From: Octopus sinensis
Lineage: Eukaryota
DNA length: 64,000 nucleotides
Direction: 5' to 3'
Assembly: GCF_006345805.1 (NCBI RefSeq)
Contig: NC_042998.1
Span: 115,940,001-116,004,000 of the forward strand
In this document: positions 27,106 through 56,839 of the stretch, piece by piece
How the letters are laid out: every line of letters begins with the position of its first letter
How positions within the stretch are numbered: position 1 is the stretch's first letter
The notes under the pieces: model-generated
What the model saw: the letters and a program-made list of their open reading frames with translations, nothing else
Databases searched by the model: none
Told to the model about the DNA's origin: nothing
Translations under genes and position numbers: made by a program

Positions 27106-27111
<6 letters not shown>

Positions 27112-27393: not shown

Positions 27394-27428
<35 letters not shown>

Positions 27429-27866: not shown

Positions 27867-27969
<103 letters not shown>

Positions 27970-30177: not shown

Positions 30178-30211
<34 letters not shown>

Positions 30212-30290
30212 CATACATGTATATGTGTGTGTGTGTGTGTGAGAGAGAGTATATATGTATATACATACATATATATGTACACACACGCAC

Positions 30291-30323
<33 letters not shown>

Positions 30324-30819: not shown

Positions 30820-30854
<35 letters not shown>

Positions 30855-31039
30855 CTGTATGTATATATGCAAATTGCCATGCTGTAATAGACAGTATATT
30901 CACTGTTTTGAGTTGGACAAAAATAATGGAATCACCTTGCATCATAATTTTCAAATATCTATAAAGCCGCCAAAAGCTTGTTTATTTTTATGGTTTTTGA
31001 TTCATTATTAATGTTGCTTAATATGTTTTGATAAAATTG

Positions 31040-33513: not shown

Positions 33514-33569
<56 letters not shown>

Positions 33570-34842: not shown

Positions 34843-35210
34843 GTGGTTGTATACTGTCAACTTAACGTGACAGTAAGGGAATTACACCACCGCTGTTTAG
34901 CCCTAGGAAGCGTCGACGCTTCCTGTCGGCCTCGACACATTTCCTGTGTCCTTATATATTTACGAAGGGAAGACAAATACCCTTCAGCTAGCAGGCCTCT
35001 GCTACTCTAGACCGATGATGGGCAAAGACCCTGAAACATGCGTGTCTCTAGATGCAGGCCTAGCTGTTGGGGGTATTTGTCTCCCCTTCGTAAATATATA
35101 AGGACACAGGAAATGTGTCGAGGCGGACAGGAAGCGTCGATGCTTCCTAGGGCTAAACAGCGGTGGTGTAATTCCCTTACTGCCACGTTAAGTTGACAGT
35201 ATACAACCAC
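34843..35210. mobile_element. Long-TIR MITE / foldback element with TA target duplication
   Basis: 34843-34982 and 35071-35210 are inverted copies with 4 mismatches in 140 bp by manual alignment. TA on both flanks; no ORF. Confidence 0.85.
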
Positions 35211-36084
35211 TATATAATAAAAATATAAGGTAAGTTAAAGTATAAAGGGAAGCCTCCAAGGAGTTCGAGATGCAAAAAACGGTATCTATCACTTCCTTTC
35301 ATTCCGATGTTCAGTCTATATCTTTCTTTCGTATTTACATACAATAAGAACACACAAACACGCGCGCGCACACACATACATATATACACCAATATACACA
35401 CATACAAACACAGTCAAGTACTGATGTAGTAGATACACAAATATAGCAAAACAGTCCCTCATTCTTCCCAGAATCCAGACCTTACTCCCTGTAGCATTTG
35501 ATCGCTTCCCAAGCTGAAAAATGTCCCCAGAGGCAGTCGTTTTGAACACATTGAAAAGATGAAGGCTGTGGCAAAGGCCCTAGATACCTTCAATTTCAAG
35601 GACATGAGGCATTCACGAAGTGACTGAAGTGCTACAACAAACGCATTGAGGTTAAGCAATACTACTTTGAAGGAGGTTAGAGTACTGTATTGTTTTGCGA
35701 TTAATAAACGCCTCTCCCGAAAAAGTCTCGAGCGCTACTACGTGTTCTCTCAATTGAGCTTATCTAGCTTTTACTTACTGACTTTATATGTAAATATACA
35801 TAGATGTATGCATTAAAAAATTTTAAACACATGTTTTTCATATTTTCCGTCAACAAATACCCAATTTCAATATCATTATAAAGTCATCGGGTACATACAC
35901 ATCTCAATAATTTTGAAAGATATCATTCAAGATATTGCTTGTTTTTGCATTGCGTTAGAAACTGTGAGTGAGAAGGCAAAGTGATTTCTTCTCCAGTAAG
36001 CTACATTGTTTTAAATTAATGGGAAATGTTGGGGTTTAACATATTATAGCGTGACATATAGATCAATTGAGGTTCATAAATATG

Positions 36085-36260
36085 AATTTGGACACAAGGC
36101 CAGCAATTTAGGAGGAGGGCGTAAGTCGATTATATCGGCTCCAAAGTTCAACTACAGCTTTTTTTTATCTACTCAGAAAGAATGAAAGGGAAAGTCGAAC
36201 TCAGGCGGCAAAGACGCGTAAAATGTAGAAAAGCATTCCGCCCGGCGTCACATTAATTCT
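36085..36260 (-). mobile_element. SINE family B, decayed
   Basis: ggacacaaggccagcaattt...gaatgaaagggaaagtcgaac, the reverse complement of the family B core. Confidence 0.6.
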
Positions 36261-39200
36261 TTGACAAAATTCATATTTCTGTCGCAGGTGACATTTTGTA
36301 TGACATGGCTTCTTTCTTTATTATTATTTTGGTTGCAATTTAACCAATGCAGCTAATTATGTCTAAGATTGATAAATAATAAACTATAAAGTTACTTCAA
36401 AGTCATACTTACATGCAGCAATATTTTGTCATATCATTTATCAGCTAAGAATTATTTCTTCAAATTCCTTGAATTTCTTTTATGTAGTGCAATATGGAAC
36501 AACTTAGCAATTATTAGGAACTTTGATTAATTCCATGTTGTCAGCGAAAGTAAACTAGGCCCACTTCAAACGTCATATTTTTGCATGCATTTCTGCTTTT
36601 AAGCAATCAGGTATTACTAACATCCAATTTACAAAAATCGTTAAGCTTAAACGTAAAGCAAGACGTTATTACCAATGTCAATGAAATTAGCAAACATTCC
36701 ACTCTCTGAATTTCTATCGCCTTTCGAATGAAGAAACTCCTGAGAACGTAAAACACTAGCATATCTTATGAAAGTAAGAAAATCACTTCGGTTCTAAAGA
36801 TGTTAAATTATATATAAAAAAGAAATAAATGAAATATTTCTCTGAATTACACAGTATTAATAAATCCTTCAGAATCGTGGATTGCATTATAGCATGTAGA
36901 TACACATAGAATTGACACAAACGCAGCCCATCCCACTTTTGAATCAGGTAAAGATCCAGGATGCGACCGGTCCATACTATAAGTCAGAAATGCACCAAAT
37001 ACTCGACTGGTACATTTTTATCGACCCCGAAATAATTAAATCCAATTTGGCTGCCTTACCACCCTTGTAAAAAAGACATTGATTTCTAACATTGACTCAA
37101 TTCTACACAGTTGTGTGGAGTAATATAATCGATTTTATCGATTCCAGTAAAAAGGTATATTCGATCGAAACCTGAATAACGAAAAACAAAGTCAAATTTG
37201 GTGGAACCTGCATTCTGAATGTACAGAAATGTAACTAAATACCGTAATGCATTTACAAGCGCTTCAATAATTCTACTAACATTCTCAGACAAGTAAAAAA
37301 AAATCCAATCAGGCTCCGGTTCGGAAATTTGTGAGTATATGAGTAGTGGATGAAAGTTTTCTAGTACTTGATTAGTTCATCATTTCATCGACCTGGGAAG
37401 GATGAAATGCTAGATCTTAAATGAGGAAGACGGGGACTTTCAATCATATCAACCATTTTACTTGACTGATTCAATATTTTTCGACCTTAGAAAAGTGAAT
37501 GATAAAGTCGACCTCGCTGCAATTGAGCTCAGAACGTAATGAGCTGCCAATAAATAACAGATGGAATTTTGTGAGAAGGCTTACCGATCCTGTCAGTGTC
37601 ATCGTAATAGTAATAGTTGTCCACTTTGACACCAGGTCACCAGAACTTTTGCAATATTCTGTTAAGTGAATCACAGACACATGAAAAGCAATAATGACCA
37701 CTGTAGGATACGAACCGTAACAAATAGCTCAAGATATTTTTCATACGCTCTACCGATGTTGCCCATGTCATTGAAATATTAAAGTATGAAGAATAAACAA
37801 GTGAATATCAAAATGATGGAACAAGAATGAAATATGGGGAAATAATACAGCTGGATGCAAAATGAGCAACTTGACACAAACTACAGAGAAGAAAGGGTGC
37901 AAAATCTTATGAAATGAGGCAAAGGTTGAATGTTTTCAAAGATCATAACATCTAAAGAGTTTCTTGAAGGAAGAAACGAAAGAAAAAGGAAATGAGAGGC
38001 AAATTTTAACTATCGAAAAATTAACGTTTATTGTTATTTCGAGAATTGCTATAATGCCGGTCAGTATCGATGGGAAGGAATGTAAAGTAATCGCTTTTGT
38101 TTGAATGGTTTTTTTTTTACCTGTTCTTATTCTTCGTAAATCTTTTCTTTGAAATCACTATAATTGCAAGTGAATAGTAATGCCTCTTAATGTAATGTAT
38201 TAAGAAAATCATTGACTGTAATCGTTTCGATTATTTTTCAAAATCAATCTACAAGATTCTCGCTGATTGAACCATTATTAACAATGAGAATGATTAAGTG
38301 AAGTAGCCAATATTGATTAATTTAAAGAGAAGAAAACAAATTTGGACATATTGTTCAATTAATTGACCTGAACCAGTTACTGGTACTTATTACTATGTGT
38401 ACCATAAGACTGTGAAAATCATTAAAACTGTGCTAAAATGTATAAGAAATATGCATCGATGAAGTCTTTCCGGTTGTTGATACAGTTAAAGAAAAACACT
38501 CTAAATATGATCGTTTCGTATTCCTCACTAGGATTACGTAATGCATATTCTTACTTTTGAATAAGTAACCTAAAGGCATTTCACAAGGGCTAATGCTTTC
38601 TTCATATAACTGAAATATAAATATGCTGAAACATGATGAGATATAAATAGGCCTGTTTCAAACAATGTACTATCCATTTATAAGACATTTGAAATTGAGA
38701 ATATTTGATATTTGTTGATTCCCACGCAGATGTTTTAGGCCGTATGTATATTGAATTGGAAGGTCCATGGTACTAATAATTTAGGTATAATTTAGGTCTG
38801 TGTAATAGAACAACAGTTGAATATGATCTAAGTTAGATTCACTTTTGATAACATAGCTTTATTAATCGATGTTGCTAATGCACATGTCCCCTAATATGTA
38901 TATAACATCATAACTCTTAGAAATGAAAGTTTTCATTTAATATGTTCAAAAATCTTTTTTTTTTTACTTTGGGATTTTCAAGCTAATCAAAACTGAAGGG
39001 ATTTCATTTAGCGTTTGTTTGTTTTTATCATTTAATATTTATTTGTTTTTTCATCATAGTATGTTTAATGAAAACTTGTATAATTATATCTAAAGGAGGG
39101 CATATGCAAATTACGGATTTAATCGCATTAATTTAGACATGTTTAATAATAACTGTTGATTTTTCAAAATACCTAATGGCTTCCAAAACTGTTTCACAGC

Positions 39201-40261
39201 TTAAAATTACAAACTACCGCCATCTTACTTTTCCGTATTTTTGAGTGATATTATTCGCATATTTTCAATGATAGAGTGTAATGTTGCTGGTCGGGCTAAA
39301 TCAAGTTCTTACAAATCACGCTCTTTTCTCTGTTGTGTTTATTGTTTAATGATTAAATGTTTACCGCACGTGAGTTGGGTATGTGTACATTTACAGCGAG
39401 GACAATCGGTTTATTTCTGTTAAACAAAGCGGAGCTGCTTTTCATATCCCGATTGTCATTTGTTTAAGGTCAGGTTTCTACAGGTTTTAATGCCGTTTCA
39501 ATTAAATTTTACGGCAATTTTTCGTTTGATAAAGTATATATTTACGTCAAAGTTTTCTGGATATCAAATATAAACGTTAAATACATTAATCTTTGTTCAT
39601 GAAGTTTATGTAAAGTGAATGTTTCAAGTAATACATATATTTGACGTTAACTTACTCTTGTGCAAATTTCTCCTAATGGAAGAGGAAAACATTTTATTCA
39701 TAATTGTCATATAGGCCTATATATTTATATTTTAAAACCATGGTAAAATGTTTGAGTTAGAATTTCATTGTTCTTTCATGCGTAGTTCTTATTGATGATA
39801 GAAATAAAGTTACCCAAAATGGAATTTATGGAGTTTCCTGTTGAGTGTTGATTTTTGAAAAAAAAAATAAAAAAAAGAAAATAAGCTGTTTGTGAGTCAA
39901 ATATTTCCTTCCAAGGTTAAACTAAAAGCTCCGTTTCTAGAATCATGCGATATTTAAAAAAAAATCAAATAAAAATAACAAAGGATAATGAAACAAATAA
40001 ACAAAACACATAACGAAAAAGTAGCACAGAAAGAAAAAAAAACAGCAATCAATCTTATACACATGCGAGATAGAATACCACATATTGTAACGGAAATTTA
40101 AATTCAATCTTAAATACAAACAAGACTGCAAACATTGAGTGAATTGTAGAAGTCAACTGCACCGATAAAACAGAGAAAGAAGAATGTTATTAAAGCCTTT
40201 TAAAAGTAAATCTCGCTACTGTAGCTTACGTACATAAATTTGTGTATATTCTTATATTCTT

Positions 40262-40455
40262 TTACTGTTACAGTCATTTGACTGCGGCCATGCTGGAGCA
40301 CCGCATTTAGTCGAATCAAATCGACCCCACGACTTACTGTTTGTAAGCCTAATACTTATTCTATCGGTATCTTTTACCGAACCGCTAAGTTACGGGAGCC
40401 TAAACACACCAGCATCGGTTGTCAAGCGATGTTCGGGGAACAAACACAGATACAC

Positions 40456-40500
<45 letters not shown>

Positions 40501-40679
40501 TTATATACATATATGCGACAGGCTTCTTTCAGTTTCCGTCTACCAAATCCACTCACAAGGCTTTGGTCGGCTCGAGGCATTAGTAGAAGACACGTGCCCA
40601 AGATGCCACGCAGTGGAACTGAATCTGGAACCATGTGGTTGGTAAGCAAGCTACTTACCACACAGCCACTCCTGCGCCT
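40262..40679 (-). mobile_element. SINE family A, full length
   Basis: Reverse complement of the 57806-58232 copy along its whole length. Confidence 0.88.
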
Positions 40680-42003
40680 GTATATAATATGTATAATATA
40701 AAATAATTATTACATGCATACACACACACACACTCATACACACACACAGACACACCACACACACACGAACACACACACACATACACACATTCACGTATGG
40801 AAATTGTAAAATTTTGGTGCTATTTATTCAACATTACAGGAGTTTCATTTGCTAATAGGAATTACAACGTTTTACATGTTAAATAAACATGTAAGGAATT
40901 CCCTTTTAGAAACAGAAGGGAAATACCCTAAGTACCTACACAATATATACATAATGAACATTCCAGTCGTTAGACGACGCGTAATGGTTCTGCACATGTC
41001 ACGTGTCAGAAACGAAATGCTAGCAGAGCAACATGAAAGGAAACGTTTGGATCAAGAAAACAACGCTACACCCAGTCAGGGAATCGAAATCACGATCTGG
41101 CGATCGTAAATGCATCTTCACAATATACATATGTGTGTGTGCTTGTATGTGTGTGTGCGTGTTTGTTCTGTAGCTCAAAGAGGAAAAGAAGTACGTTTTG
41201 ACCGGTATTTCAAAGTGCTGGCAGAGGTTTGGCACCTACAATGTATAGAAATGAAAGCTTCACGTTAGACACTCTGACAATTCTGCCAAAACACTGTCCT
41301 TGGTGAGTTCGCTGTTTATCGACCCAGAAATTATGAAAAACAATGGTGACGCCACGGAAGTAGAAGTGTGCACAGGGAAATTTGGAATAATTACCATGAA
41401 ACCTTGTATCCAACAATCTAACGATCCTGACTATTCAATACACACAAACACACACACACACATATATATATTTAAAAATATCTTTATGTATAAATGTAAG
41501 ATCCAGGGATCGAGGTGTAGGAAGTAAAAGAAAGTTAACTTCAAGCAATCCATAATAAATATAGAAAAACAACTTTCAGGGACAATAGTAGTTTATTGAG
41601 GCGGAAGGTTGTGGATAAGTTACTTTCATATTCCACGGTAGGTGAATGGGGTTACTGGGTGTGCGAATACAAATACAAGAATTACGGAATGGTGTAGGTA
41701 AGATCCGGGCTACATGTTTTTCATTGAGAGCGGAACCTCAGAAGTGGAAAAAATCCAAGCGAGGTGTATACTATCGGCTACTCTTCATGCATGTCTTTAT
41801 AGCTCGTCTGCGTATTGTTTATAGCTTTTGTACTATATGTGCATCAACATATACCCCCTTGCAACAATGTAACCTTTAATTTTATCAAGATATCCTTGCC
41901 CTGAAAAGTAGCCGGTGGTATACACCTCCCTTGGATTTTTATCACTTTTGAGGTCCACTCGCTGCGAACCTTATGCAGCCCGGATCTTACCTACTCCATT
42001 CTG

Positions 42004-42094
<91 letters not shown>

Positions 42095-42408
42095 ATACGT
42101 ATGGTGCAAAAGTTATAAATAATACGCAGACGAGCTAAAAAGACACAGTGTATTATAGTTTTACGCTCAGGAAAAATCAAAGGGAAAGTCTTTTCCATTT
42201 CGAGCATACGATCTTTTACAGAAAGACTCGACGAGAATATAAAGCATGGCGAGAGAAAAGAACAAATGTGTCTCAAACGATCACCGTGTGCTAAAATGAC
42301 CGAAGAAAGGAAAGGATACCAAGGTGTGAGTTGTAATGAAGGAAATGTAGTTGGTGATATACCTTTGTCACACATGCAACATATAGATGGATATATATAT
42401 ATATATAT

Positions 42409-42449
<41 letters not shown>

Positions 42450-44229
42450 CGGACAGACAGACAAGCAGACAGACAGACAGGCAGGCTGGCAGGCAGACAG
42501 ACAGATAGACAGACGGATAGGCAGTTACATACATTGCCTGTGAAGTACCACAGAGGTTACTCTCGAATTCGAGTTGAAATCATAGGAGAAAACATTGGAT
42601 AGATGTGCGCCTCGTAGGAGCAAGCCTATCATTCTGCTATTGCGATCCAAGCATACTGATAACGTAGCCATTACAGTTTTATATCTAAAACATTTTGAAA
42701 GAAGAAACATTGTACATGCGGAGTCCAACGGACGGCTATAAGTAAAAAGAAACGATTGATGCCAAACGCTACACAGCAAAATATATGAAATAATATAGAA
42801 GTGAATAGAAAATGTCAATTACGACAAATTTAGAACAATGGATTTCAAGAAGAAAAAAAATACGCCCCAATCCTCAAGGAATAGTAGAACATTTTCCGAC
42901 ATAGATTTACCTACTGGCATTTCAATTGTAATTTATATTCTATACGTGAAATGGAAAGCATTTTATTTGCATAGTAAAATGCAGAATTTTTAAATGGAAG
43001 CTAACATTTGAGAGACAGAAAATCACTGGAAACAATGGGAAATATTTTATAGAATTATTTTGCAACATCAAAAGCAAGCTAGAGGGAAAAGCGAATGATG
43101 TCCTCATATAGACGAGTATGTACTCCCACTCTCTCTGGAGGGGTACGTCAGTTAAATGACTGAAGAATCCACATTACAATGCAAAATTCACGAGTTTTTG
43201 TATATAAATTAACGCACATTACACATATGCATATACATACACATAGACACACACACTTACACATACACTTACACACACATACGCATACACACATGCACGC
43301 ATATATACAGTATTTCCTATGTGTACAGTTAGATGTATTACTGCTATTGGTGAATTTAAATGTTCCATATTGAACATCATTTTCCACTCCACTTCATGCA
43401 AAGTGGTATGGATGATATTGTATTTAGTAGTATTGATGGTTATGATAGACAAAAGGAATATGGTAAACAACATTATGTAATAAAATGTTATCATGAAAAA
43501 CCATTGTGGATCTGAATCCAAATGCAATATGTAAATCCACTGAAGGGGAAGTAAACAGCTACAATGTCCAAATACGCGTATGGAACAAATGGTATATACT
43601 ACATCTTGTAATTATCATATTCTTTAATCACACAATTTATTATATTCTTTAATCACACGATTATGAAATATGGAAGCCAAACATAGGTACAACATGAAAT
43701 AATTAAATGTGATGCACAGACGATTGGATAGATTCCTCTTTAGTATATTATGCTTATTTGTCTCAGATTAGGTCTAAAGTAAATTGCATGTAGATTTGAA
43801 TTCCGAATGTAAGATTTGAATTCAGAACTGAGCCAATAGGAGAAGTATACTTGAAGATATAAAACAATAAATAACTGTTTATCTTCGTCATCAGTTCCAC
43901 TGCATGACGCTTTGGGAAAGTGTTTTCCACCATATTCTTGGTTTGAATAGTACCTTGCAAATGAGATGCATGCACGCAGTACGTACATATATAAGTACCT
44001 AATTATTTTAGACTTGGTGTACACCGGCTAGTATGCCGATTGAAGCACGTTCACTTTTTGCGTTTACCAGGTGTCATCGGCAGTATAGTTGTAACAGTTA
44101 CTGAATTCCTCCGTGTCTACTGTCTCTTTCTCTCATATGTTATGTATAAGTACCTACAAATACACGTTATCTTTAAGGTATGTCAGCCAGCTATTTTGGG
44201 GTTGTATTGAAAAATGGAATGTTGTTAGG

Positions 44230-44650
44230 AAGAAGGTAATTCCTGAGGTCACAGTTGACACGCAACACGTTGCTTTCTTCGCTTTTTAGCACTGCTGTTG
44301 TTTAGTAAATGTAGTCTGAGATATATTATACGACACTCGGAGGCTATCTGCACTAATCTTGAGCCTCTACCTTAGACAGAGCCTGTCGATTTCCCAGTTT
44401 CTATGGATATTTCCATTTGACGCCAATTTCTGGCGGGTTTTAATGTTTATGGAGTAGGTTTTCTTTCAGACCATTCAAGTATCTCAAATGTTGATATCAG
44501 TACTGGTACTGAAAATGCATTGTGAGATAATGTTGCATGAATGAATGCATATCATATTTTCCTAAGTCTAGTAGTGTAATGTTCTTGGTCACTTTGTTCA
44601 TAGTACCTTCATAGGATACATATTTTTTTAATTAATACCCAGGTATTTGT
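44230..44650 (-). mobile_element. Decayed internal fragment of an R4/Dong-like LINE
   Basis: SYEGTMNK...HNAFSVPVLISTF.ILEW...KTRQKLASNGNIHRN..IDRL parallels the post-RT region of the 61.9-63.9 kb copy (HNAFAVLVLLPTFGIL). Confidence 0.55.
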
Positions 44651-44833
44651 GGCATTCATTATGCGAAATAGGAGACAAAGTATACGCTCGTTGTTTGTAA
44701 AAGAAAAAATGAGACTGTTACTGATTTTGGCTGGAGTAGTCGGGGTAACAACGATTTAAAGTGTTTTCTATATTTGATTCGAGTCGAACATTCTGGAACT
44801 ATGGAGTACTTCTTAGCTGATACGATATATATA

Positions 44834-44878
<45 letters not shown>

Positions 44879-44879
44879 A

Positions 44880-45340
44880 GAGTAACGAAGCTAAAGCACG
44901 AAGAGTAAAGCGCTTTGCACAAATTGATCTTGAACGCTGATGTGCATACACACTAATTTTTAACGTTCTGGCTGACTTCCGCTGTTTCCAGCAGTGCTTG
45001 GAAGGAAGGTGTGTCGCGTGTAATCGTCGCATTGACCATGACAGAGTAAGCTGAGCAGAGAATCCCCAAATTTTGCCAAAAGCTTGGTGACATCTGCTCA
45101 GAGGCCTACACAAAGTTTTCAGAAAGTCTTCTTCGTTCTCGACAAAATCAAGGAGAACTTGTGCAACTGAAACCCGAGAGTATTTTTGGTCAGCTAAAAG
45201 CAGTTTTGGTACAAACTTGGCAAACACACGTCTCATACCCAAATCTTCAGTGAAAATGGTGTGAACTGAAACGTAACTTGTCTGTACAGCCTTTAATATC
45301 ACACGGATAATGGTTCGACTATTATAATATAATGCCATGC
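44880..45340. mobile_element. Rearranged mariner remnant (N-terminus on +, WVPHEL-region segment on -)
   Basis: + strand MTE*AEQRI.KFCQKLGD..SEAY; - strand VHTIFTEDLGMRRVFAKFVPKLL.ADQK..RVSVAQ.LL...ENEEDFL. Confidence 0.68.
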
Positions 45341-47574
45341 TTGTATCAAAATAAATATATAAATAATACTATATAATATACTTATATCAAAATAACTTTC
45401 ATGAACTAGTTATCATATATATTATCATTAACCATTTCAAATATTTGAACATCAACCGCATATACCAAAATATATATATATTTTTCGATTATTTTGAATT
45501 TGAACAAAAGAATGTGTGGTACTTCCATTGGTTCTGTCAAACGGTGTTTGCAGTTAATTATGTACTGTTTTATATCTTTTATCATTTACTAGCTTCAGTA
45601 GTTGGACTACGGCCAGACTAGGACACCGCTTTCCAAGGCTTTAAACGAACAACAGAACTCCAGTACTTATGCTATTTCATACTATTCTGGCACATATTCG
45701 TCCGTCCCTTTTGCTGGACCGCTAGATAACGGGAACGCTAGCAAATGAGCTCCGTTTTTAGCTCGTGATTAAGAGGTAAATTTATTTTCTTGTAAATGAT
45801 TTAGTCAGACAACGAGACTATTCGATGGAAGGGAAGCACGAATATTGGTCACAAACGGAAATTCACCAAAAGTTACAACGAAATGGTTGTATTAATTCTT
45901 TTCTACAATAGGCACAAGACCTGAAATTTTGGGCAGGGGTTAGTCGATTACACCGACTCCACTGCTCCACGGGTACTTGTCGCTAACCACTTTGCCCGGC
46001 GTAGTAATAATTTTGCCGTTGACCGCTGTGATGGTAAAATTAATTAACACTTTTAAACTGTAAGTTAATTAAAAGTGAATACTAAATTAAATAGAAAGCA
46101 AATATAAGTTAAATAAAGATATCAATATTCTTATATAAATATACTACATATCACTGTACAAATAAGCTATACTGTTAAGTATATTTTATGGCAGACTAGA
46201 TTAAATTAGCTCACTATGATAATTAAAAATAAATATATTTTGTTTTATATCATTTAAAGTATTGGATCTAAGTTCAAGAAATTGACCGTTTTTAATGTTA
46301 AAATCAGGAAATGATAGGAGAAAGTAGTTAAAGTATATAAAAAGTTTTAGATTGTAAATAAAATTCCATTGAAAAAATATAATATAGATAAATTCCATAG
46401 GGAACAGCGTGTTGGGAATATAAAGATTAGACCAATAGATAGTATTGAATAACAGTAATTTTCAAATATGCTTAAAATGTGAAAAGACCACACATAAAAG
46501 CTTATGAATCTTAGTTTAATCACATTTTCTAATTACACATCAAAATAGTTTCTATCTTAACGAAATATAATGAAACCTAAACAAAATCACAAATATATAG
46601 AAGCGTATACACATATGCATTGGCATACTAAAAAAGTACGCTGTATACACGTATACATAGATACATACATACATACATACATATACACACAAATACACAC
46701 ACATACATATACATATATACTTGCGTGTGTGTGTGTATGTGTGTGCGTACATGTATGTATGTGTGCATGGATGCACGTGTGTATATATACATATGTATGC
46801 ATGTATGTGTGCGTATTTGCGTAAATATAATTAAGTGTGAAAAATTTTATGATACGGTTTTATCTATACAATATTGTTTGAAAGTGTATCTTTTCAGTGT
46901 GTGTGTACTGGTGTGTTTTTCATTAGCGATATGTAAGCATCTGAAACCATAAAGTTTTATTGAAATTCTTCAAATCTTGACATGATTTATTTACTGATGT
47001 TCTCGAAAAGGAGAAAAAATACGTTGAAAATATAAAAAATACTATGAAATAACGTAGAAGAAAAAAGAAGGAAAGAATTAGGAGAAATAGAAAAAGGGAA
47101 GCGGAAGTAGGTCAGATGAAGACAAGTTCTTTTTACAATACTGCATCGAGAAGAAATTATTTCAATATACAACCACCAACAGAACAACAACAACTACGAA
47201 AATGAAAATAAAAACAAAAAATTATACTGGCTAACAATATTGCGTTACGTGGAAATCTTAAAACACGGAACAAAATATTTTGTAAGGATTCCTTTGTAAC
47301 TGATTCTCTCTGAAAATATCAGATTTCTCTGAATAAACTGAAGTCTATAATTTCAGACTAAGAACGAGTGTTAAGCAAATGGGACGGATATTTCTGGTTC
47401 TGAACTTAAAATTATTGTCACATAATGTATATTTTCAAAACCAATTATGCTGTGAAGAATATTGTAGTTTTGAAATGTTTACGCGTAGAATAGAACGTCT
47501 GATTAATTAGTAATTAGCGTAATTACTAGTGAACTTAGATTGGCAGAAACGGTAAAGAGGTGTCAGAAACGTTA

Positions 47575-47810
47575 AGGCGGCGAGCTGGCAGAAACGTTAG
47601 CACGCCAGGCGAAATGCTTAGCGGTATTTCATCTGCCGCTACGTTCTGAGTTCAAATTCTGCCGAGGTCGTTTTTTCTTTCATCCTTTTGGGGTCGATTA
47701 AATAATTACCAGGTACGCACTGGGATCGATATAATCGACTTAATACGTTTATCTGTCCTTGCTTTTCCCCTCTGTGTGCAGCCCCTTGTGGGCAGTAAAG
47801 CAATAAGAAA
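47575..47810 (+). mobile_element. SINE family B
   Basis: aaggcggcgagctggcagaaacgttagcacgccaggcg...gagttcaaattctgccgaggtcg...catccttttggggtcgat. Confidence 0.8.
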
Positions 47811-47959
47811 GGGTAAAGAGCTGTACTGGATGGCTTGTAGCAGTTAAGTACGTTTCTCTACGATCTCAATCTACAATTAGCTTATATCGACCTTTGTATC
47901 ATTTCTCACACGAGAAAGTAAGTGAAATAAGGATGACAAGCAATATCGTATTAGTACTC

Positions 47960-48185
47960 TTGCTAGAAGCAGTTCTTTCAAATTTTGGCACAAGACCGGT
48001 AATTTTAGGGATGGGTGTTAGTCGAATAGGTGGACCCTAATTCTTGAGTGGTACTTTATTTTATTGACCCCGAAAGGATAAAAGGCAAGGTTGACCTCGG
48101 TGAATTTGAACTTAGAACGTAAAACTAGAAATGATGCCGCTAAGAATTTTGTCCTCGTGCTACCAATTCTGTCAGCTCACCACTT
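47960..48185 (-). mobile_element. SINE family B, inverted relative to the 47575 copy
   Basis: ggtactttattttattgaccccgaaaggataaaaggcaaggttgacctcggtgaatttgaac. Confidence 0.75.
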
Positions 48186-49606
48186 TATTCCTGCAAGAAG
48201 TAATGACCAAATCTTCAAAAAATCATGAGTTATTCTCTTAAGAAAGAAAGAACAAACTGGATAGTGTAGTCTTTCAATGTATTTCGTAAATCAGCTAAAT
48301 GTTAAACAACAACAACAGAAATATATATAAAATAACGTCAAATTACTAGCTTACAATCTTCTGACCTGCTCCCAACGTCAGATTAATAATACTTTGTTTT
48401 GTTTGACATATACGCAAATCAAAGATTACAAATAGCAATGTCTTCATGGAGAAAACAGAGAGGAAAATCATCCATGTTTTATACAGCTCCTAATGCGTCA
48501 TGTATGTACCATTATAAAATTGTAGAATGTATTACAATGTATGAAAACATCATGGACATATAACAAAATGTTCTGAGCTTCTGACTGCGTGCATTACATT
48601 ATTGCGTTTTATTAGGTTTTTATTCCTATTCTTGTTGGGATTAATTGCAATTTTCATTCCTAGAAGTCAAATCCTTTGGGAGATTGTACTAACACTTTTG
48701 TCCACAAGGATATTTTACCTTTTACGTTTTATTATTTTTTCATACGAATTGTGGCTTGTTTATTAGTTCCGTTATTTTCTATTTCTAAGTTTGGAATAGA
48801 TTTGGAACGCTTTTATTGTTTACCACAAGGTCATACTTGATCGATCTGATATTTCATCAATTGTGCTCCTGTCATTTCATCCTATTGTTTTTGACTTCTT
48901 TCAAGGACTTCATATTTAAATATGTAGAACTAGAGTAACGGTTGATAGGGATGTAGCCGCTAAATCCAGCAGGTCGAGCGTCTGCATACAATTTCTTTCT
49001 TTGATGGTTTTATATATTTTTTTTACTCAAATAATACTCATAATATAATCAAAACAATAAAAATCATACAGGGTTCGATTTTTGTTCTTCCTCCAGCGAT
49101 TTTAATACATAATAGTAGTAGATAATCGTTTGCAGGATCATAAATTAGTTAATCTCTACTCTTCTGAAATGTCGGAATCTGTGTGCCAAGGTACAAATTA
49201 ATAAAAAAGCATACTCTGAGGGATTCTGTTATGCTATTTTGAGTGAAATACCATATTTTCCAGTAGTATTTCATTCAGCTAGGCACGATTTTATTTTCTT
49301 AAACCGAGAATATAGTTTTTTTTTTTACTGGGGGAATACAAACTAAGACCACAAATACAGAGTAAGAAAGATTTCTTGCTGTAACAAAGCACAAAAGCAC
49401 TGTTATCGATACTGAGAAAGTGAGAGAGAGAGAGAGGGGGGAGAGAGAAAGAGAAAATTATGAAGATTTACAACACAAATTGCCATACATACATACATAC
49501 ACACATACATAATACATACATACCTACATACATATATATGTATATATATATAGAGAGAGAAAGTGTGTTCGCATAAAAGTATAGAGTTACACACACACAT
49601 ACACAA

Positions 49607-49643
<37 letters not shown>

Positions 49644-49716
49644 CAAGTATACAAAACATATAAGACTATATGTATTGATATATCTATCTATCTATATATA
49701 TGTGTGTGTGTGAGTG

Positions 49717-49785
<69 letters not shown>

Positions 49786-51630
49786 TTATGCATATGTGTA
49801 TATTTGAATGGCTATGCTTATACACACGTACACACACACAGACACATATATATATAGAGAGGAGAGAGAGCCTGGTTTGGTGTGTATATGCATATGTTAA
49901 CTAACTGAATAGAAAGACAATGTGAAATCCCCTGATACTTAGCAGCGTAGAAAATGTTTTTACCAATCAATTATTAGAAAAACATATTGATCTTGTGATG
50001 AAAAGTAAATAAGTTAATTGTAGTTGTCCTGTAAACTAAGAAAAACAAGTAGTCGTATTGAATGAATCTCATTTGCAGTTCGATAAATGCCAAAACAAAA
50101 ATATTCATTGAGGCATTTACAAATTACAAGGATTTCAATACATGGTAGTATTTCTATACTAAATTGTTACATTATAGTAGAAAATAATATATTATGTTCT
50201 GGATTTTTCTTGAACTACTGGCTGTTTTTTTTTACCACAAAGCCAAACACGAGAATAGCAGTATCAATGATATTTTACTACTTTTAGAGCTCTTGAAAGA
50301 TAAGTTTTTGTTAGAGAAGGAACGACAGCGTCTATGCCTGTTTTTATGCCTCTGAGATTGGAAGAAGAGAAGGAAAAATGCAGCTGCCCAACAAAAAAAG
50401 ACGGCTCGAATGTTTTCAACATAGTAGACATCTCAAAGGGTACATACAGTTTCTATCGAACAAACTACTCGCAGAAATTTCTGCCGAAATTTCTGTTGTG
50501 GTAAAAGACGATATTTAACCAAAATGCTACACAATGTGGTCAATGCTATCGAAGTGGAGGTATTTGCCAGTAAACTAAACTTCCTAACCACACAGTCAAA
50601 CCTGTACCCAAGCTGTACAATAAATATACATTAACATCACTGGATTTGGTCAAAGGCAACTAATTCAACCCTAAAGATATTTTCAATAGATGTGTTGTAG
50701 TCTCCAACAACTTTTCAAAATGAAAAAGCTGAAGTAGTTCTATGAACAACAGAAGCAAAACGAATAGAAAAATAGTCTATTTATTAAACCAATGAATTAC
50801 ATTTTATGGAAAATATTGGTTCATTCAATAGATACAAAGGCTGATTGTCAGAATATTTGAATATACCTTTTTAAATGGTTGCATGAAATGTTTCAAACAA
50901 CTTTGCATCGATATGACCAACAACAAAGTTCAGTGGTAAAATCTAACATAAAGAATATCAATGGTTAATCACACTCAAGCAATCAATGATTAAGGTTCTA
51001 TGTGTTCGTTCATGCCTTTTAGAAATAGCAGACAGGTTCATTCACACAGCAACGTAGTGACTTAAAAAATATATAAACGTTAGAAGATACGAACTTGGTT
51101 AAACTCTATCTGAAACAAAACAAGACAGAAAGAGCAAATCTGGAACGCAGCTGATCATAGGTCCACTAAATAAGGATAACCTAGTGCGCAACAACATTAA
51201 GTAATATGAAGTATAGCAACGGTAGCCGAATCTATTTAAAACACTTAGTGGCCATGAGCCTATAGAAAGATCTTGTCAACGAATCTGATCGTAAAAGCAA
51301 TGGAAGTCTAGAATTATTGTTGTTGTTGTTATTATTATTTAGCCCTATGTTTTTTGAAGATATCTACTTACAAAAGGCTCTAGCTGTTGCGTTCTGTCAA
51401 CTTCTAGTTGACCGAACGGATGTATAGAGTTTCTAAAGTTGCTGTAATGAAGTGTTAAATTTATAAATGTAATATGTTGTTAGAAGAATATGTATGAACG
51501 TTAGCCTTTTACACAGGAAATGAACTGTGGAGAGGCTTGGGGAACAATAGCATTGACAGCAGACGAATGAAGCGTTGCATTTAAACTTTTCTGGCGCAAC
51601 AGATAAACAACAGATATAGGCCAGTGAAAG

Positions 51631-51704
<74 letters not shown>

Positions 51705-52682
51705 GCTCCTGTCTTTTAAGGCAAAGAAATATTAGTACATGAACTTTCAGGAAAAAGATATCTTGAAATTCTGACACAAGCTTGGGTAACATTTATTTAG
51801 TGAAAAGAGATGCTTATCTTCTCTATAGATTTTGAAATGTTGGTGTTGAGAGAACTGGGTCTGTAGTGGGGAGAACATTTAATTTATGCTAGCAATTTAC
51901 ATTTCGGCCAGGTCAAAGTTACAAATGCTAAAGCAAGAAATTAAATATCCAAAAACTTGATGGCATAGGTGTACGCCAATTGTCAGCTACTAAATGCTAG
52001 TGGTTGCCAAGACAACTGGTGTAGGAATTCTGGTTACTCAGAAGTGCAAATGAATAGCACAGGGTGGCGGTTTCTCTGGATCTTGTAAAGACAAATAACT
52101 GTGCGTTCTACTGACCCATTAAAACAGAAGATTAATTATTGACTGCAAGAACCAATGCTTATTGAGTTCTGATCAATGCAAATCAATTTCTGCAAAAGTT
52201 AATGAATTCTACACATGTGAAGACTGAGACAAATAATTCTGTTTAAATATAGCATATTCATATGCAGCGGGGTATGGAGATGGTAGAAAGCGCCATTGAT
52301 TTTTAATAAATTCCACAAAGTTAAGCCTTTGACCGAGATTAATTTTCCAGTTGAGCCGATTATTTCATTAATTTCTGAAACATCGATTTTACTCAATAAC
52401 CCGGAAAGTGGTAGGTGCTATCAGACACACTTGCTCCCAACATGCTTCACGAAGACGAAATCACTGATGGTGTCTGAAGAATAATTAAATGCAGCAGAAC
52501 ATTATCATTATAGAAGTGATGGTTGAGGAAATACAATGATGCGCTAGACATTTTAACTGCATGTAGGTCGACATCCTATTATCAGCATTCCGCAACATAT
52601 CTAGAATAATTTGTTCAGTCGTTCATCCATGTTTCAAAGCTTTATATATATATATATATATAATATATATATATATAACTAT

Positions 52683-52759
<77 letters not shown>

Positions 52760-53622
52760 ATATATACATACATATACCTACCTATCTACCTACCTACCTA
52801 CCTACCTACCTACCTACATACATACATACACCAAGCAACTATATGCAAACAGATAAAATGGAATAAGTTATTTTCCTATAAAAATTGCCTTAATACATAG
52901 TCAAAAATATTCAGCATTTTGATTTTCGAAATCCATAATTCCTGCAGCTTGATTCTAGTGATAATATTTTCTTGGTTTCTTTCTTATTTTATCAATAAAT
53001 TTCAAAAATGAGCATATACATATTTATTTGCAGACACACTGGCTGGGTTAATGTATGTTCTCTGTAATTAGGAATTCCACGTATTGATTGGCATCTCCAT
53101 TATGTACATGTTTACTGAGAACGACTACATTATATCAATTCACACATATACAATTACATTTCCATATTTATCTCATCATAAAGAATTATATACACTTTGT
53201 GCAGCGAATTAAGTCCTACGCTAACTGTTCAACACTGAATACATTTGTCAAAAGCTGCGAAAGTAAAAACAAACGTATAGTATCTAGATTTAGTCTGTTA
53301 TATTAAAAATATAGCTTCGAATGAGAGTGATGTATCACTATCAAACTAGAAAAACCGCAAGTTACGAAAATGAGTATGAAGTGTACATGAAAGACGAAAT
53401 TACACCCTCTGGCACGCACTGGAATATATAGCTGAACGCATATTTACACAAAAAGTATATATACTTAGAAACAAGCTACAATCAACAATGGTGTGACTGA
53501 GTTTATGAATATAGACATAAAGAAGCATCGTCAGAAGTATGGATATACGCATGCATACGTATACACACTTACGCATATATATATCTTGTACACAAGCATA
53601 CACACAAACACACACACATATG

Positions 53623-53663
<41 letters not shown>

Positions 53664-53745
53664 GTTTATGTATACATGTATATATCTTTATAAATATGTA
53701 TATGTATATGTGTGTTTTATAAGTATATTTATGCCTACATATGTC

Positions 53746-53779
<34 letters not shown>

Positions 53780-54559
53780 ATATATATAAATATATATATA
53801 TGTGTGTGTGTGTGTGTATGTATATACATGTGTGTGCGATTATGTTTCTATATCTGTTTGAAAGCAATATATGTGGCCATGCGTGCTTCTGCTCGTAAAT
53901 ATTTATAATGCTAACTGGGAAGAAACAACATGAATAGAAAAGTGAAAGCTAGATTTGATTTATACGACATTTTCAGGTGATGACAATCATTTATAGCCAT
54001 AATGAAGATTGAATAGCTTCTAAAAATATTATATAAAAAGCATTCTTGGAAAGAAATTAAAACCTCCAGAAAACAAAATATATTTAAAGTGTAGAAACAC
54101 GATATCTATAATAAACAACTTTAACTGTGGCCCTTACACTTTCTCCTCTGTCTCACTGTCTCTGTCTTTGCCTTTCTTTTTCTCTCACAGTGGGTACACA
54201 TATATGTGTCAATATGAGTATATGTATCTATGTATATATATATATCTATGTATATATACATATGTGTGCGTGTGTGTGTGTGAAATAATCACGACGTGTC
54301 TGCTCCAGTATGATCTTACATGAGATGAGAAAATAGTCGAAAGAACTAAAGAATATACTGATATAATAATAAATAGTTGGCAATGGTAATGAACAAGGTA
54401 CAAAGCAGCACCGGACTGAGAGTAGAATTTTGCATGCATTCCCTAGACCGAGAATCCATCAGAGTTCTCTTTTCCTAGCCACTAACGTGTGCGTATTAGG
54501 AGAGGACGAAAGCCTCTTTTCTGTGCATCGTTCGCGAAGTGAAGTCTCACATACTCTCA

Positions 54560-54883
54560 TTCAAACATACACGCACTCACACACTCGAATACACACTCAC
54601 ACACACACACTCGCATACACACACCCCCACACCCCCACACACGCATAAACACACACACACACATACACACACACAGACACATGTATGTAAGTATGTATGA
54701 AATGCAGTTATGTCCTGCGCTAGCTGTGATTTACGCAAACCATATAACGAAGTAAGTATACACACAGACATGTGCGCTCGCACATACACATGTATATAAA
54801 TATATATTTATGCATATGTATATATGTACATATTTTTGTACAGATACACACACACACAAACATACACACACGCACACATATAC

Positions 54884-54942
<59 letters not shown>

Positions 54943-54948
54943 ATATAT

Positions 54949-55033
<85 letters not shown>

Positions 55034-55035
55034 AA
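54560..55035. repeat. (CA)n/(TA)n compound microsatellite cluster
   Basis: Direct reading. Confidence 0.9.
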
Positions 55036-56163
55036 ATATTATTGGTGAATTGAAGAAATGGAGCTGAACGAAGATTGAACAGAAATCGTTTTATTTCATT
55101 CTACACGTGTTTCGAAAGGCACAATTTACCAAAATCCGATTGAATAATGAGACCATATTGTGTCTTTCTCTTCAGGAAGAAATAGGAAATCCGTTGGAAA
55201 AAACAAAAACAGAACAGAGGCGGAGCAAAACAAATCGAACTAGGCTCCTAAGAGCCCATGGCAAAACTGTTTATCAGTGTATGTTGAGAACCGGTGGCTG
55301 AAGATTTTAACGGGTCAGGCAGCGGTCAATCATGTGGGTGAGGGTGTGTAGATGTTCTTTGTGACCGAGAATAAAGTTCTGACTATTTAAGGAATATTGG
55401 ATGTTTTATAAGGGGCGAGAAGTAATCCAGCGATGTTTCAGAAAAACAGATCGTCTCGTTGCAACAGCTCAGCTACTGGAAGATCCTGGAAGGAATTGTA
55501 CCAAATTTTGGCACTGAAAGCTACACCAGTGCCAGAACGAGTCGACAGTGCACAGTCGCAAAGATGCCAACAATGCCATCGCGCTTCAGGAGTTAGAATT
55601 TCTAATCTCCTTACTCATCTATGGAAGGAACGTCTCTAAAAATCTCTCTCACTTATATTTTCAAATAACACTTATGGTCTTTAATTTTAGTTAATACCTA
55701 ACTGGACTCGCACATATCTTGCTTTCTCATAAGGATAAATTTGAATCTCCTAGTTCCTATTCTGTATTTGTTTTATCAAGTCATATGTAAAAAAAAGTTT
55801 ATACGTCTTGTACGGAAGAGTGCAGTGTTACATAATTTATTTAACGTAATCTAATTAATTCTATTACACCATGAATTTGCTATGAATTTTATATTGCTGT
55901 ACAAAACGATCGTCTGCATGAATTATAATTCTCTTATATATCTTAACACCTTCTCTTCTCTATTTTTATCAAAAGTGTTGAGTTTTATGGGATCTCATTC
56001 CGTAAATTCACAAGACACTATATACAAGTATTATTTTCATATTCACAATTTTACGCCAGTAAGCTAGCAGCAAAATATGAAGAATCTATATTAGAAAACT
56101 TCTTTTGGAAAACTCCAAATTAAAAGACGAATCTAATTGAATCTTTTTACACACACACAAACT

Positions 56164-56216
<53 letters not shown>

Positions 56217-56658
56217 ACGCTTTCTCTCTCTCTCTCACATAAATATATAGACAAACATATATATACATATAGATAAATACGCACACACATATAAATAGAT
56301 ATATATACATATAGATAAATACACACACACACACATATATATATATAAATGAATATATACATATATATATATATGCACTCATTTATATGCATATGCACGT
56401 ACATATGCGTTCTTATATATATATATATAATATATATAATATATATATATATATACATATATACATATGTATATAGATGTATACTTACACACACAGATAT
56501 GAATGCGATTCTGTATACCGACAAGTGTGTCAATATACTGTGTATGAGCTGTTGTGTATGAAATTGCTTATGTGCGTGCACTTGTGTTTTTTGTGTAAGT
56601 GTGTACATGTGCCGTTGTGGATATAAATGCAAAAGTAGCTTAGAACACGTACAGTCAC

Positions 56659-56839
56659 CTTGCCGCATCAACGAGCTGACAGTAAACCAGAGGCTGTTGA
56701 GAATTGTAAATTGGTTCTCCACCACATCAGAATCTGGGTTGCAAGGATGTGGGTTATACCATTCATAAGGACTGAAGCGAGCTAGTACGAACAGCATAAA
56801 ACTGACGCATAAGTAAGCTGCTACCACATATACCCAAAC
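56659..56839 (-). CDS. Ionotropic glutamate receptor (kainate-type) internal exon: M1, M1-M2 loop, M2 pore helix and Q/R site
   Basis: Translates [33 protein letters not shown]...[19 protein letters not shown](G). [13 protein letters not shown] and NS.WF...LM.QG are kainate/AMPA receptor hallmarks. Acceptor ctgttttacag|GTT, donor CAAG|gtgact; 181 nt, ends in phase 1. Confidence 0.97.

What the first reader, a model, noticed from the sequence alone, without database searches (positions are those of the whole stretch)
56663..56665. Pore Q/R site is hard-wired as Arg (CGG) in a kainate-type glutamate receptor
Seen: the M2 exon ends ATG CGG CAA G (LMRQG); the middle G is plus-strand c56664. Established: the family consensus is MQQG. 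Vertebrate GluA2/GluK1/GluK2 get R only by ADAR editing CAG to CIG, read as CGG, exactly the codon present here. R at this site removes Ca2+ permeability and polyamine block and lowers conductance. Genomic R has been reported in a few cases (to my knowledge hagfish and a teleost gria2 paralog), so the phenomenon is not unprecedented. Inference: this is a constitutively Ca2+-impermeable subunit, and the A-to-G change may have fixed a formerly edited site. That would be notable in cephalopods, where recoding is usually described as retained rather than fixed.
Basis: partly seen in the sequence, partly recalled or inferred. Interest (0 to 1): 0.8.

Follow-up and report, generated by a model that had tools for sequence, protein, structure and literature searches.

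The report
Hard-wired pore arginine, octopus kainate receptor
An octopus glutamate-receptor gene carries in its DNA the pore arginine that vertebrates make only by RNA editing. The arginine is real, shared with argonauts and (in mRNA) cuttlefish, and one A-to-G change from other molluscs, but built-in arginines at this site occur in other animals, so this is a good new example and not a new phenomenon.

Summary
On the minus strand, 56665..56663 is CGG (Arg) in ...SLMRQG, and it aligns with the Q/R-site Gln of GluK2 (E 5e-66). The window holds three exons (M1-M2, M3, S2) of a kainate-type subunit. Their 210 residues are identical in proteins annotated from the Octopus sinensis, O. bimaculoides, O. 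vulgaris and Argonauta hians genomes. An assembly error is therefore very unlikely.

Sepia esculenta mRNAs also read CGG (12 of 12 assemblies encode R). The gene sits inside the molluscan GluK2-like/Aplysia GluR7 orthogroup (NJ bootstrap 200/200), where every non-cephalopod has Q. Haliotis, Aplysia and Solemya genomic DNA read ATG CAG CAA G|gt, so the octopus codon differs by one A>G transition.

Two corrections. First, annotated octopod proteins and Sepia mRNAs use a donor 6 nt further 3'. This inserts Asp-Cys after MRQG, an insertion seen only in coleoids among 395 homologous pore loops. Second, nothing here shows a formerly edited intermediate: no relative with an edited CAG was found, and no ECS-like duplex.

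Genome-encoded R or K at this site also occurs in hagfish, a killifish, insects, a barnacle, a spider and a mite. Low Ca2+ permeability is inferred by analogy only. Verdict: a new member of a known kind, of moderate interest.

The parts
56653..56839 (-). M1 plus pore-loop (M2) exon of a kainate-type iGluR subunit, as used in annotated octopod proteins (187 nt; ends ...ATG CGG CAA GGT GAC T)
   Evidence: acceptor ttttacag|GTT at 56840/56839. The translation is identical to O. sinensis XP_036354915 and others, including MRQGD(C).
56663..56665 (-). [quoted passage not shown]
   Evidence: codon. (aligned with the first Q of MQQG in GluK2). (orthologues have CAG).
56657..56658 (-). It has C at +5 and is apparently bypassed.
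   Evidence: the same position is the donor in Haliotis, Aplysia, Solemya and an unnamed mollusc. Octopod proteins and Sepia mRNAs read through it.
56651..56652 (-). GT of the donor actually implied by proteins and mRNAs (GACT|GTACGT). Using it adds 6 nt, which gives Asp-Cys.
   Evidence: MRQGDCCEF appears in all octopod models and in Sepia mRNA (GGT GAC TGT TGT GAG).
24370..24587 (-). M3 exon: (C)[41 protein letters not shown]...TFFK, carrying the SYTANLAAF gate motif
16006..16231 (-). S2 (ligand-binding lobe) exon: [15 protein letters not shown]...GYGIATPR(E), including the ligand-binding Glu in YLGES

Best explanation
The window covers part of an octopod gene for a kainate-type ionotropic glutamate receptor subunit. 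It is the coleoid orthologue of the molluscan 'GluK2-like' gene (Aplysia GluR7). Its pore-loop apex residue, the Q/R site, is a genome-encoded arginine (CGG). The ancestral molluscan state is Gln encoded by CAG, and a single A>G transition produced CGG. That change was fixed before Octopus and Argonauta diverged. It probably predates the last common ancestor of coleoids, because cuttlefish mRNAs carry the same CGG. In the same lineage the 5' splice site moved 6 nt downstream, which inserted Asp-Cys directly after MRQG in the selectivity-filter stretch. Everything up to here is shown. What follows is inferred from GluA2 and GluK1/2 biophysics. A fixed positive charge at the narrowest point of the pore should lower Ca2+ permeability, relieve block by intracellular polyamines, and lower unitary conductance in every channel that contains this subunit. 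No ADAR activity and no Q/R switching would be needed. The subunit probably acts mainly in heteromers with Q-type subunits. How the extra Asp-Cys modifies this is unknown.
For: Codon and exon. Alignment of the R to the Q/R site of GluK2: (full-length octopus protein vs GluK2, E 2.8e-266, with a 2-residue gap in GluK2 opposite the inserted Asp-Cys). Domain set ANF_receptor + Lig_chan-Glu_bd + Lig_chan. The same 210 residues, including MRQGDCCEF, occur in four octopod genome annotations. Sepia esculenta transcript contigs (runs named in PMC9538352) have CGG in 4/4 contigs and R in 12/12 proteins, despite 118/631 nucleotide differences from octopus. Orthology: an NJ tree places the coleoid genes inside the molluscan clade, 200/200 bootstraps. 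All 12 non-cephalopod molluscan orthologues in that tree have MQQG. Genomic CAG with the donor directly after CAA G in Haliotis, Solemya and Aplysia. 78 of 78 genomic M2 exons from metagenome host DNA have Q (66 CAG, 12 CAA). The 10-residue spacer (Asp-Cys insertion) occurs only in the 21 coleoid sequences among 395 pore loops. The functional roles of the Q/R residue and the +4 acidic residue are established knowledge (summarised in PMC3753602 and bioRxiv 10.1101/2024.06.25.600656).
Against: No electrophysiology exists for this subunit. The Asp-Cys insertion shifts the conserved acidic residue from +4 to +6 and puts a new Asp at +3, so vertebrate R-form behaviour may not carry over. The Sepia data are mRNA only, so a genomic CAG edited to near 100% in decapodiforms is not excluded. 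The same Sepia mRNAs show high-level A/G recoding elsewhere (E659G in 10/12 assemblies). No Nautilus sequence was obtained, so 'coleoid' versus 'cephalopod' timing stays open. No raw reads of the window's own assembly were examined.
Confidence: 0.8

Rival explanations
1. Fixation of an edited site. The coleoid ancestor had genomic CAG that ADAR edited to CIG, and the G was later hard-wired by an A>G substitution.
For: The ancestral codon was CAG, the same codon that vertebrates edit. The orthologous cuttlefish mRNA looks recoded at nearby pore positions: five variable sites among three same-species contigs are all A/G, including I611V, E622G and I645M, and E659G appears in 10/12 assemblies. 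At one of these positions (Ile/Val, ATT/GTT in Sepia) the octopus genome has Val (GTC), so a G-for-edited-A replacement is plausible in this gene.
Against: No species was found with CAG plus an A/G mismatch at this site. There is no ECS-like pairing partner: the local fold shows no duplex at the codon, and the best duplex along the ~40 kb of pre-mRNA in the window, -50 kcal/mol, falls within the range of shuffled queries (mean -44.6, sd 2.5, min -50.4). A direct A>G mutation needs no extra assumption. Shoshan et al. 2021 (PMC8382921) report that A>G substitution at strongly edited coleoid sites is suppressed, not favoured.
Confidence: 0.12
2. The site is hard-wired only in octopods. Cuttlefish and squid keep genomic CAG and edit it to near completion, so the Sepia CGG is an RNA-level G.
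For: All Sepia sequences come from RNA-seq assemblies. The same mRNAs show a near-fixed A>G-type change in the otherwise invariant LTVERM motif. Exact codon identity (CGG) with octopus is also what full editing of CAG would give, while only 4 of 11 conserved Arg codons are identical between the two lineages.
Against: 12/12 assemblies encode R, whereas the other editing-like sites vary between assemblies. No genomic DNA from decapodiforms could be retrieved to test this.
Confidence: 0.15
3. Artefact: the G is an assembly or polishing error, or a private or heterozygous variant of the sequenced animal.
For: None beyond the general possibility. The window's own raw reads were not available.
Against: Proteins from four octopod genome annotations (O. 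sinensis, O. bimaculoides, O. vulgaris, Argonauta hians) all encode R at this site, and independent cuttlefish transcript assemblies from several sequencing runs read CGG.
Confidence: 0.01
4. Decaying or non-channel copy: the unusual pore loop (R plus a 2-residue insertion) marks a pseudogene or a subunit that no longer conducts.
For: Homomeric all-R AMPA and kainate channels conduct poorly (established). The pore loop carries several lineage-specific changes.
Against: A full-length open reading frame with all domains is present. There are 8 amino-acid differences against 118 nucleotide differences over 631 nt between octopus and Sepia, and 100% identity among octopods. The ligand-binding Arg and Glu and the SYTANLAAF motif are intact. 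The gene is transcribed in cuttlefish larvae. The CGG contains a CpG whose deamination on the opposite strand would give CAG, yet it is retained (inference).
Confidence: 0.03

Closest known systems
Vertebrate GluA2, GluK1 and GluK2 Q/R-site editing (ADAR2, intronic ECS)
   Same: Homologous position at the pore-loop apex. The same surrounding nucleotides (ATG C?G CAA GG). The translated codon is the same as the edited form (CGG). The expected biophysical effect of Arg is the same.
   Different: Here the G is in the genome. No CAG, no ECS-like duplex and no Q/R choice are present, so there is no developmental or regional regulation through ADAR. A two-residue insertion follows the site.
Genome-encoded Arg at the Q/R site in hagfish iGluRs (Eptatretus burgeri and Myxine glutinosa GluA-like MRQG; Myxine GluK2-like MRQG) and a killifish GluK1 (Nematolebias whitei)
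   Same: A hard-wired MRQG in an AMPA- or kainate-class subunit whose relatives have Q.
   Different: These are independent events in vertebrate lineages. Those proteins lack the Asp-Cys insertion. I saw them only as database protein predictions.
Arthropod kainate-type pore variants with Arg or Lys: LRQG in Apis, Pollicipes, Diatraea, Dendroctonus and Bactrocera; MRQS in Araneus; MKQG in Blomia
   Same: Protostome kainate-class subunits with a genome-encoded basic residue at the Q/R site.
   Different: These belong to different orthogroups. In several insects and one unnamed contig the R version sits next to a Q version as tandem M1-M2 exons. These are probably mutually exclusive exons, so the Q/R choice is kept by splicing. 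The octopus window holds only one copy of the exon.
Molluscan GluK2-like orthologues (Aplysia californica GluR7, Crassostrea gigas XP_034333627, Haliotis, Solemya, Liolophura, Lymnaea)
   Same: Same orthogroup, with 68-78% identity over the 208 residues encoded in the window. For the three whose genomic DNA was read (Haliotis, Aplysia, Solemya), the same exon start and ancestral donor position. Aplysia GluR7 is reported to account for most kainate-subtype gene expression in the Aplysia nervous system (PMC5225553).
   Different: All have MQQGCE..., i.e. Gln at the site and no insertion; the three read at DNA level (Haliotis, Aplysia, Solemya) encode that Gln as CAG.

Membership tests
Kainate-class ionotropic glutamate receptor subunit (AKDF subfamily) | Domain order: amino-terminal domain (ANF_receptor), S1/S2 ligand-binding domain, and a Lig_chan transmembrane domain with a re-entrant pore loop | tested here: met
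   on the O. sinensis protein P0280, which is identical to the window over its 210 encoded residues: PF01094 5e-61, PF10613 4e-41, PF00060 2e-50. Only M1-M2, M3 and part of S2 lie inside the window.
Kainate-class ionotropic glutamate receptor subunit (AKDF subfamily) | SYTANLAAF gate motif in M3 | tested here: met
   ...[19 protein letters not shown], encoded at 24370..24587 (-).
Kainate-class ionotropic glutamate receptor subunit (AKDF subfamily) | Closer to GluK1-3 than to AMPA or GluK4/5 subunits | tested here: met
   GluK2 889 bits, GluK1 874, GluK3 836, GluK5 663, GluA1-4 about 580-612. In the tree, Anser GluK2 groups on the kainate-type side and hagfish GluA is the outgroup.
Kainate-class ionotropic glutamate receptor subunit (AKDF subfamily) | Residues that hold the amino-acid ligand: the S1 Arg and the S2 acidic residue | tested here: met
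   alignment: octopus sitYLREkvidf vs GluK2 titYVREkvidf, and [10 protein letters not shown] vs yallMESttie.
Kainate-class ionotropic glutamate receptor subunit (AKDF subfamily) | Gating by glutamate or kainate | not testable with these tools
   Needs expression and recording.
ADAR-edited Q/R-site subunits (GluA2/GluK1/GluK2 type) | Genomic CAG (Gln) at the site | tested here: not met
   the genomic codon is CGG.
ADAR-edited Q/R-site subunits (GluA2/GluK1/GluK2 type) | An editing-site complementary sequence that forms a duplex with the exon around the site | tested here: not met
   no duplex at the codon in the 401-nt fold; the inverted repeats nearby are microsatellites and do not involve the exon; the best duplex in the ~40 kb of pre-mRNA in the window is not better than shuffled queries.
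ADAR-edited Q/R-site subunits (GluA2/GluK1/GluK2 type) | A-in-DNA versus G-in-RNA mismatch at the site | not testable with these tools
   No reads were available. Octopod DNA has G. Sepia RNA has G, and Sepia DNA was not obtained.
Genome-encoded (hard-wired) Arg at the Q/R site | An Arg codon in genomic DNA, within an exon flanked by introns | tested here: met
   ag|GTT...ATG CGG CAA GGT GAC T|gtacgt, with introns of about 32 kb and 8 kb following.
Genome-encoded (hard-wired) Arg at the Q/R site | Reproducible across independent assemblies and species | tested here: met
   four octopod genome annotations; the same codon in Sepia mRNA.

The most novel reading that the evidence does not exclude
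The site records editing-to-genome assimilation in the lineage with the most extensive mRNA recoding known. Either the coleoid ancestor edited CAG here and later fixed the G, or decapodiforms still carry CAG edited to near 100% while octopods have hard-wired it. Combined with the coleoid-only Asp-Cys insertion in the selectivity filter, this could give a pore with permeation properties unlike any characterised AMPA or kainate receptor.
Probability: 0.12. Interest if true: 0.6.

Novelty: new member of a known kind. Interest (0 to 1): 0.35.

Why it matters
The Q/R site is the textbook case of functionally essential A-to-I recoding. Coleoid cephalopods are the animals that recode most. It is therefore instructive that, in this kainate-type subunit, they do not use editing at that site but encode the 'edited' residue in DNA, and have kept it across octopods and apparently cuttlefish.

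The finding gives a dated, single-nucleotide, lineage-specific Q-to-R switch with clear outgroups. That is useful for the debate over whether edited adenosines get replaced by genomic G (harm-permitting versus adaptive-diversity models). It also points to a previously unremarked two-residue insertion in the selectivity filter that can be tested by electrophysiology.

It does not reveal a new mechanism. The proteins are already in public annotation, and basic residues at this position occur in several other animal lineages.

Tried and rejected
1. Literature search for 'Q/R': the slash cannot be searched. Work-arounds found no paper that mentions the Q/R residue of a cephalopod kainate receptor. 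Ramos-Vicente 2018 and Greer 2017 include an Octopus kainate-type gene but do not discuss its pore residue.

2. The first protein search with the 133-aa peptide returned only short fragments, at most 80% identical, because targets appear limited to about 1.75 times the query length. Repeating the 208-aa peptide three times reached full-length proteins.

3. The search of 50%-identity representatives gave no close relative, only the range of residues found at the site.

4. Attempts to get genomic DNA for a decapodiform or Nautilus orthologue all failed. The exon-only protein search found no cephalopod ORF. A degenerate DNA pattern and a protein-guided scan of metagenome contigs found none. The Argonauta gene range is too long to return DNA. 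Liolophura and Mizuhopecten are not on record.

5. ECS hunt: the local fold, the inverted-repeat search and the RNAduplex scan over the ~40 kb of pre-mRNA in the window were all negative or not significant.

6. Alternative copy of the M1-M2 exon (mutually exclusive Q version) in the window: none. There is only one tblastn locus for this exon.

7. More exons in the window: none upstream of 56839 or downstream of 16006.

8. Rfam scan of the window: no match.

9. Structure prediction was considered and not run. A monomer model cannot show pore properties, and the fold is not in doubt at E 1e-266.

Full report
WHAT IS IN THE SEQUENCE

Read on the minus strand, the region 56839..56653 is an exon. 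It is preceded by ...ttttacag and reads GTT TGG ... TTG ATG CGG CAA GGT GAC T, followed by gtacgt.

The exon encodes [62 protein letters not shown]. Two further exons of the same gene lie downstream on the minus strand:
- 24587..24370 encodes M3 with SYTANLAAF.
- 16231..16006 encodes part of S2.

The introns between them are about 32 kb and 8 kb. tblastn with 270 homologues found no other exon of the gene and no second copy of the M1-M2 exon in the window.

IDENTITY OF THE GENE AND THE SITE

The M1-M3 peptide matches solved GluK2 structures at E 4.9e-66. The Arg lies opposite the first Gln of MQQG, which is the Q/R site.

A protein search reached full-length targets after the query was lengthened. 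It found a 922-aa protein, 'glutamate receptor ionotropic, kainate 2-like' of Octopus sinensis. The same 90% cluster holds proteins from O. bimaculoides, O. vulgaris and Argonauta hians. All four are identical to the window over the 210 residues it encodes.

The full-length protein aligns end to end with GluK2 (E 2.8e-266). It keeps the ligand-binding Arg and Glu and has the ANF_receptor, Lig_chan-Glu_bd and Lig_chan domains. The gene is therefore a kainate-type subunit, and the Arg is encoded in four octopod genome annotations. An assembly error is not a credible explanation.

A CORRECTION TO THE EXON END

All octopod proteins read MRQGDCCEF, not MRQGCEF. The GT immediately after CAA G (56658..56657) is the ancestral donor position. 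Haliotis, Solemya and Aplysia splice exactly there: ATG CAG CAA G|gt.

In the octopus that site reads GTGACT, with C at +5. The annotated products need the next in-frame GT, 6 nt downstream (GTACGT, at 56652..56651). Cuttlefish mRNAs contain the same six nucleotides (GGT GAC TGT TGT GAG), so the shift predates the split between octopods and decapodiforms.

The result is an Asp-Cys insertion directly after the Q/R-site motif. Only the 21 coleoid sequences have 10.

EVOLUTIONARY DIRECTION

A second cluster, about 95% identical, consists of RNA-seq contigs. Two of its runs are Sepia esculenta larval transcriptomes (PMC9538352). All four contigs examined read CGG, and all 12 proteins in the cluster have R. 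This holds despite 118/631 nucleotide differences from the octopus exons and only 85/189 identical synonymous-capable codons.

In a neighbour-joining tree of 35 full-length proteins, the coleoid genes fall inside the molluscan orthogroup. That group contains Aplysia GluR7, Crassostrea, Haliotis, Patella, Lymnaea, Solemya, Liolophura and others, and the grouping has 200/200 bootstrap support. Every non-cephalopod member has MQQGCE.... Genomic DNA of three of them reads CAG at the site. An unnamed mollusc contig reads CAA.

In 78 genomic M2 exons recovered from host DNA in metagenomes, the site is always Gln: 66 CAG and 12 CAA. Arg is therefore derived. It arose by one A>G transition from CAG, on the branch leading to coleoids or, at the latest, to octopods.

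R is not ancestral in molluscs.

WAS IT ONCE AN EDITED SITE?

I found nothing that shows this. No relative with CAG plus an RNA-level G was identified.

The pre-mRNA offers no convincing pairing partner for the exon end:
- The 401-nt local fold has no duplex over the codon.
- Nearby inverted repeats are TA/TG microsatellites.
- The best duplex for a 61-nt probe along the ~40 kb of pre-mRNA held in the window is -50 kcal/mol. Shuffled probes gave -44.6 +/- 2.5, with a best value of -50.4.

The idea is not absurd, however. The cuttlefish contigs from one species differ from each other only by A/G (5 of 5 sites). The sites include I611V in the pore helix, E622G just after the insertion, and I645M before SYTANLAAF. 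In addition, 10 of 12 assemblies carry Gly in place of the near-invariant Glu of LTVERM. That pattern looks like A-to-I recoding of this mRNA.

Where Sepia varies between ATT and GTT, the octopus genome has GTC (Val). Because the Sepia data are RNA only, a genomic CAG edited to completion in decapodiforms cannot be excluded. I put that at about 0.15, and the general 'assimilated edit' history at about 0.12. Shoshan et al. 2021 argue that A>G replacement of strongly edited coleoid sites is rarer than neutral expectation. A demonstrated case would therefore be of interest, but a plain mutation remains the default.

HOW UNUSUAL IS A HARD-WIRED BASIC RESIDUE HERE?

Database proteins predicted from genomes show:
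- MRQG in hagfish GluA-like proteins (Eptatretus, Myxine), in a Myxine GluK2-like protein and in a killifish GluK1.
- LRQG in bee, barnacle, moth, beetle and fly kainate-type proteins.
- MRQS in a spider.
- MKQG in a mite.

In sawfly and parasitoid-wasp gene models, and on one unnamed genomic contig, an R-type and a Q-type M1-M2 exon sit in tandem (also visible in the Ramos-Vicente alignment). This suggests a third route to Q/R diversity, by mutually exclusive exons. Within its own orthogroup, the coleoid gene is the only one with Arg.

LIKELY FUNCTION

This section is inferred, not shown. In GluA2 and GluK1/2 the Q/R residue sits at the tip of the re-entrant loop, at the narrowest part of the pore. 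Arg there lowers divalent permeability, removes polyamine block and lowers unitary conductance. The acidic residue four positions downstream contributes to polyamine binding (established; see PMC3753602 and bioRxiv 10.1101/2024.06.25.600656).

A subunit with a fixed Arg should impose these properties on any channel it joins, without dependence on ADAR. All-R homomers conduct poorly in vertebrates, so heteromeric assembly with Q-type subunits is the likelier role.

The Asp-Cys insertion moves the conserved Glu from +4 to +6 and places an Asp at +3. How this alters the filter is unknown. The phrase 'constitutively Ca2+-impermeable' should therefore be treated as a hypothesis.

Purifying selection is evident:
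- The 210 residues are 100% identical among octopods.
- There are 8 amino-acid differences against 118 nucleotide differences compared with Sepia.
- A CpG-containing codon is retained, although deamination on the opposite strand would revert it to CAG (this last point is inference).

VERDICT

'Hard-wired R' and 'one A>G step from CAG' are supported. The exon end is corrected by 6 nt, which reveals a coleoid-specific insertion. The 'formerly edited' history and the Ca2+ claim remain untested. The finding is a new member of a known kind and of moderate interest.

Noticed in passing
L001-L004 (Sepia transcript contigs); homologous to window 56839..16006 (-): Cuttlefish mRNAs of the orthologue differ from one another only at A/G positions. 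The sites include I611V (pore helix), E622G, I645M and K/R sites. 10 of 12 assemblies have Gly instead of the near-invariant Glu in [15 protein letters not shown]. This looks like dense A-to-I recoding around the pore. The octopus genome has GTC (Val), GAA, ATA and GAG at the four corresponding pore-region codons.
   Followed up: partly
window 56651-56659 (-): Two in-frame 5' splice sites lie 6 nt apart: CAAG|GTGACT, the ancestral position, and GACT|GTACGT, the one used in annotated products. Whether the upstream site is still used, giving a canonical-length pore loop, is unknown.
   Followed up: partly
P0293 (Diprion similis), P0316 (Leptopilina heterotoma), P0424 (unnamed genomic contig), P0422 (Dryococelus); also L044, L048, L049, L051: Arthropod kainate-type genes carry tandem duplicated M1-M2 exons. 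In several, one copy encodes Arg at the Q/R site (LRQG or MRQS) and the other Gln (MQQG). These are probably mutually exclusive exons that give a Q/R choice by splicing rather than by editing. Some gene models include both copies in one protein.
   Followed up: no
window 56147-56600 and many other stretches (e.g. 20700-20980, 26600-26960, 27700-27950, 42010-42100): There are long TA/TG/CA microsatellite tracts in the introns. They create stop-free 'ORFs' of 130-226 aa (YIYIYI..., HTHTHT...), including one that runs on from the M2 exon. These are artefacts of composition and not genes.
   Followed up: yes
window 44877-45338 (-): A 153-aa ORF lies in the 32-kb intron. From memory, its middle (…EDLGMRRVFAKFVPKLLLADQK…) resembles the N-terminal part of mariner-type transposases, so it may be a transposon relic. 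A Pfam scan gave no match at E <= 0.01.
   Followed up: partly
window 56827-56815 (-), M1: At the position of the GluK2 M1 I/V editing site, the octopus and cuttlefish proteins have a genome-encoded Val (VYVVAAY). At the Y/C site they have Tyr. Other molluscs have Met, Ile or Val at the first position, so this is probably ordinary variation.
   Followed up: no
L005 (Logan SRR29346471, unnamed mollusc): This genomic contig has the exon most similar to the coleoid one outside coleoids (93% identity). It reads ATG CAA CAG G|gtagga (Gln, CAA), and S1 is fused to the same exon. The species could not be identified. If it were Nautilus, it would date the Q-to-R change to the coleoid stem.
   Followed up: partly
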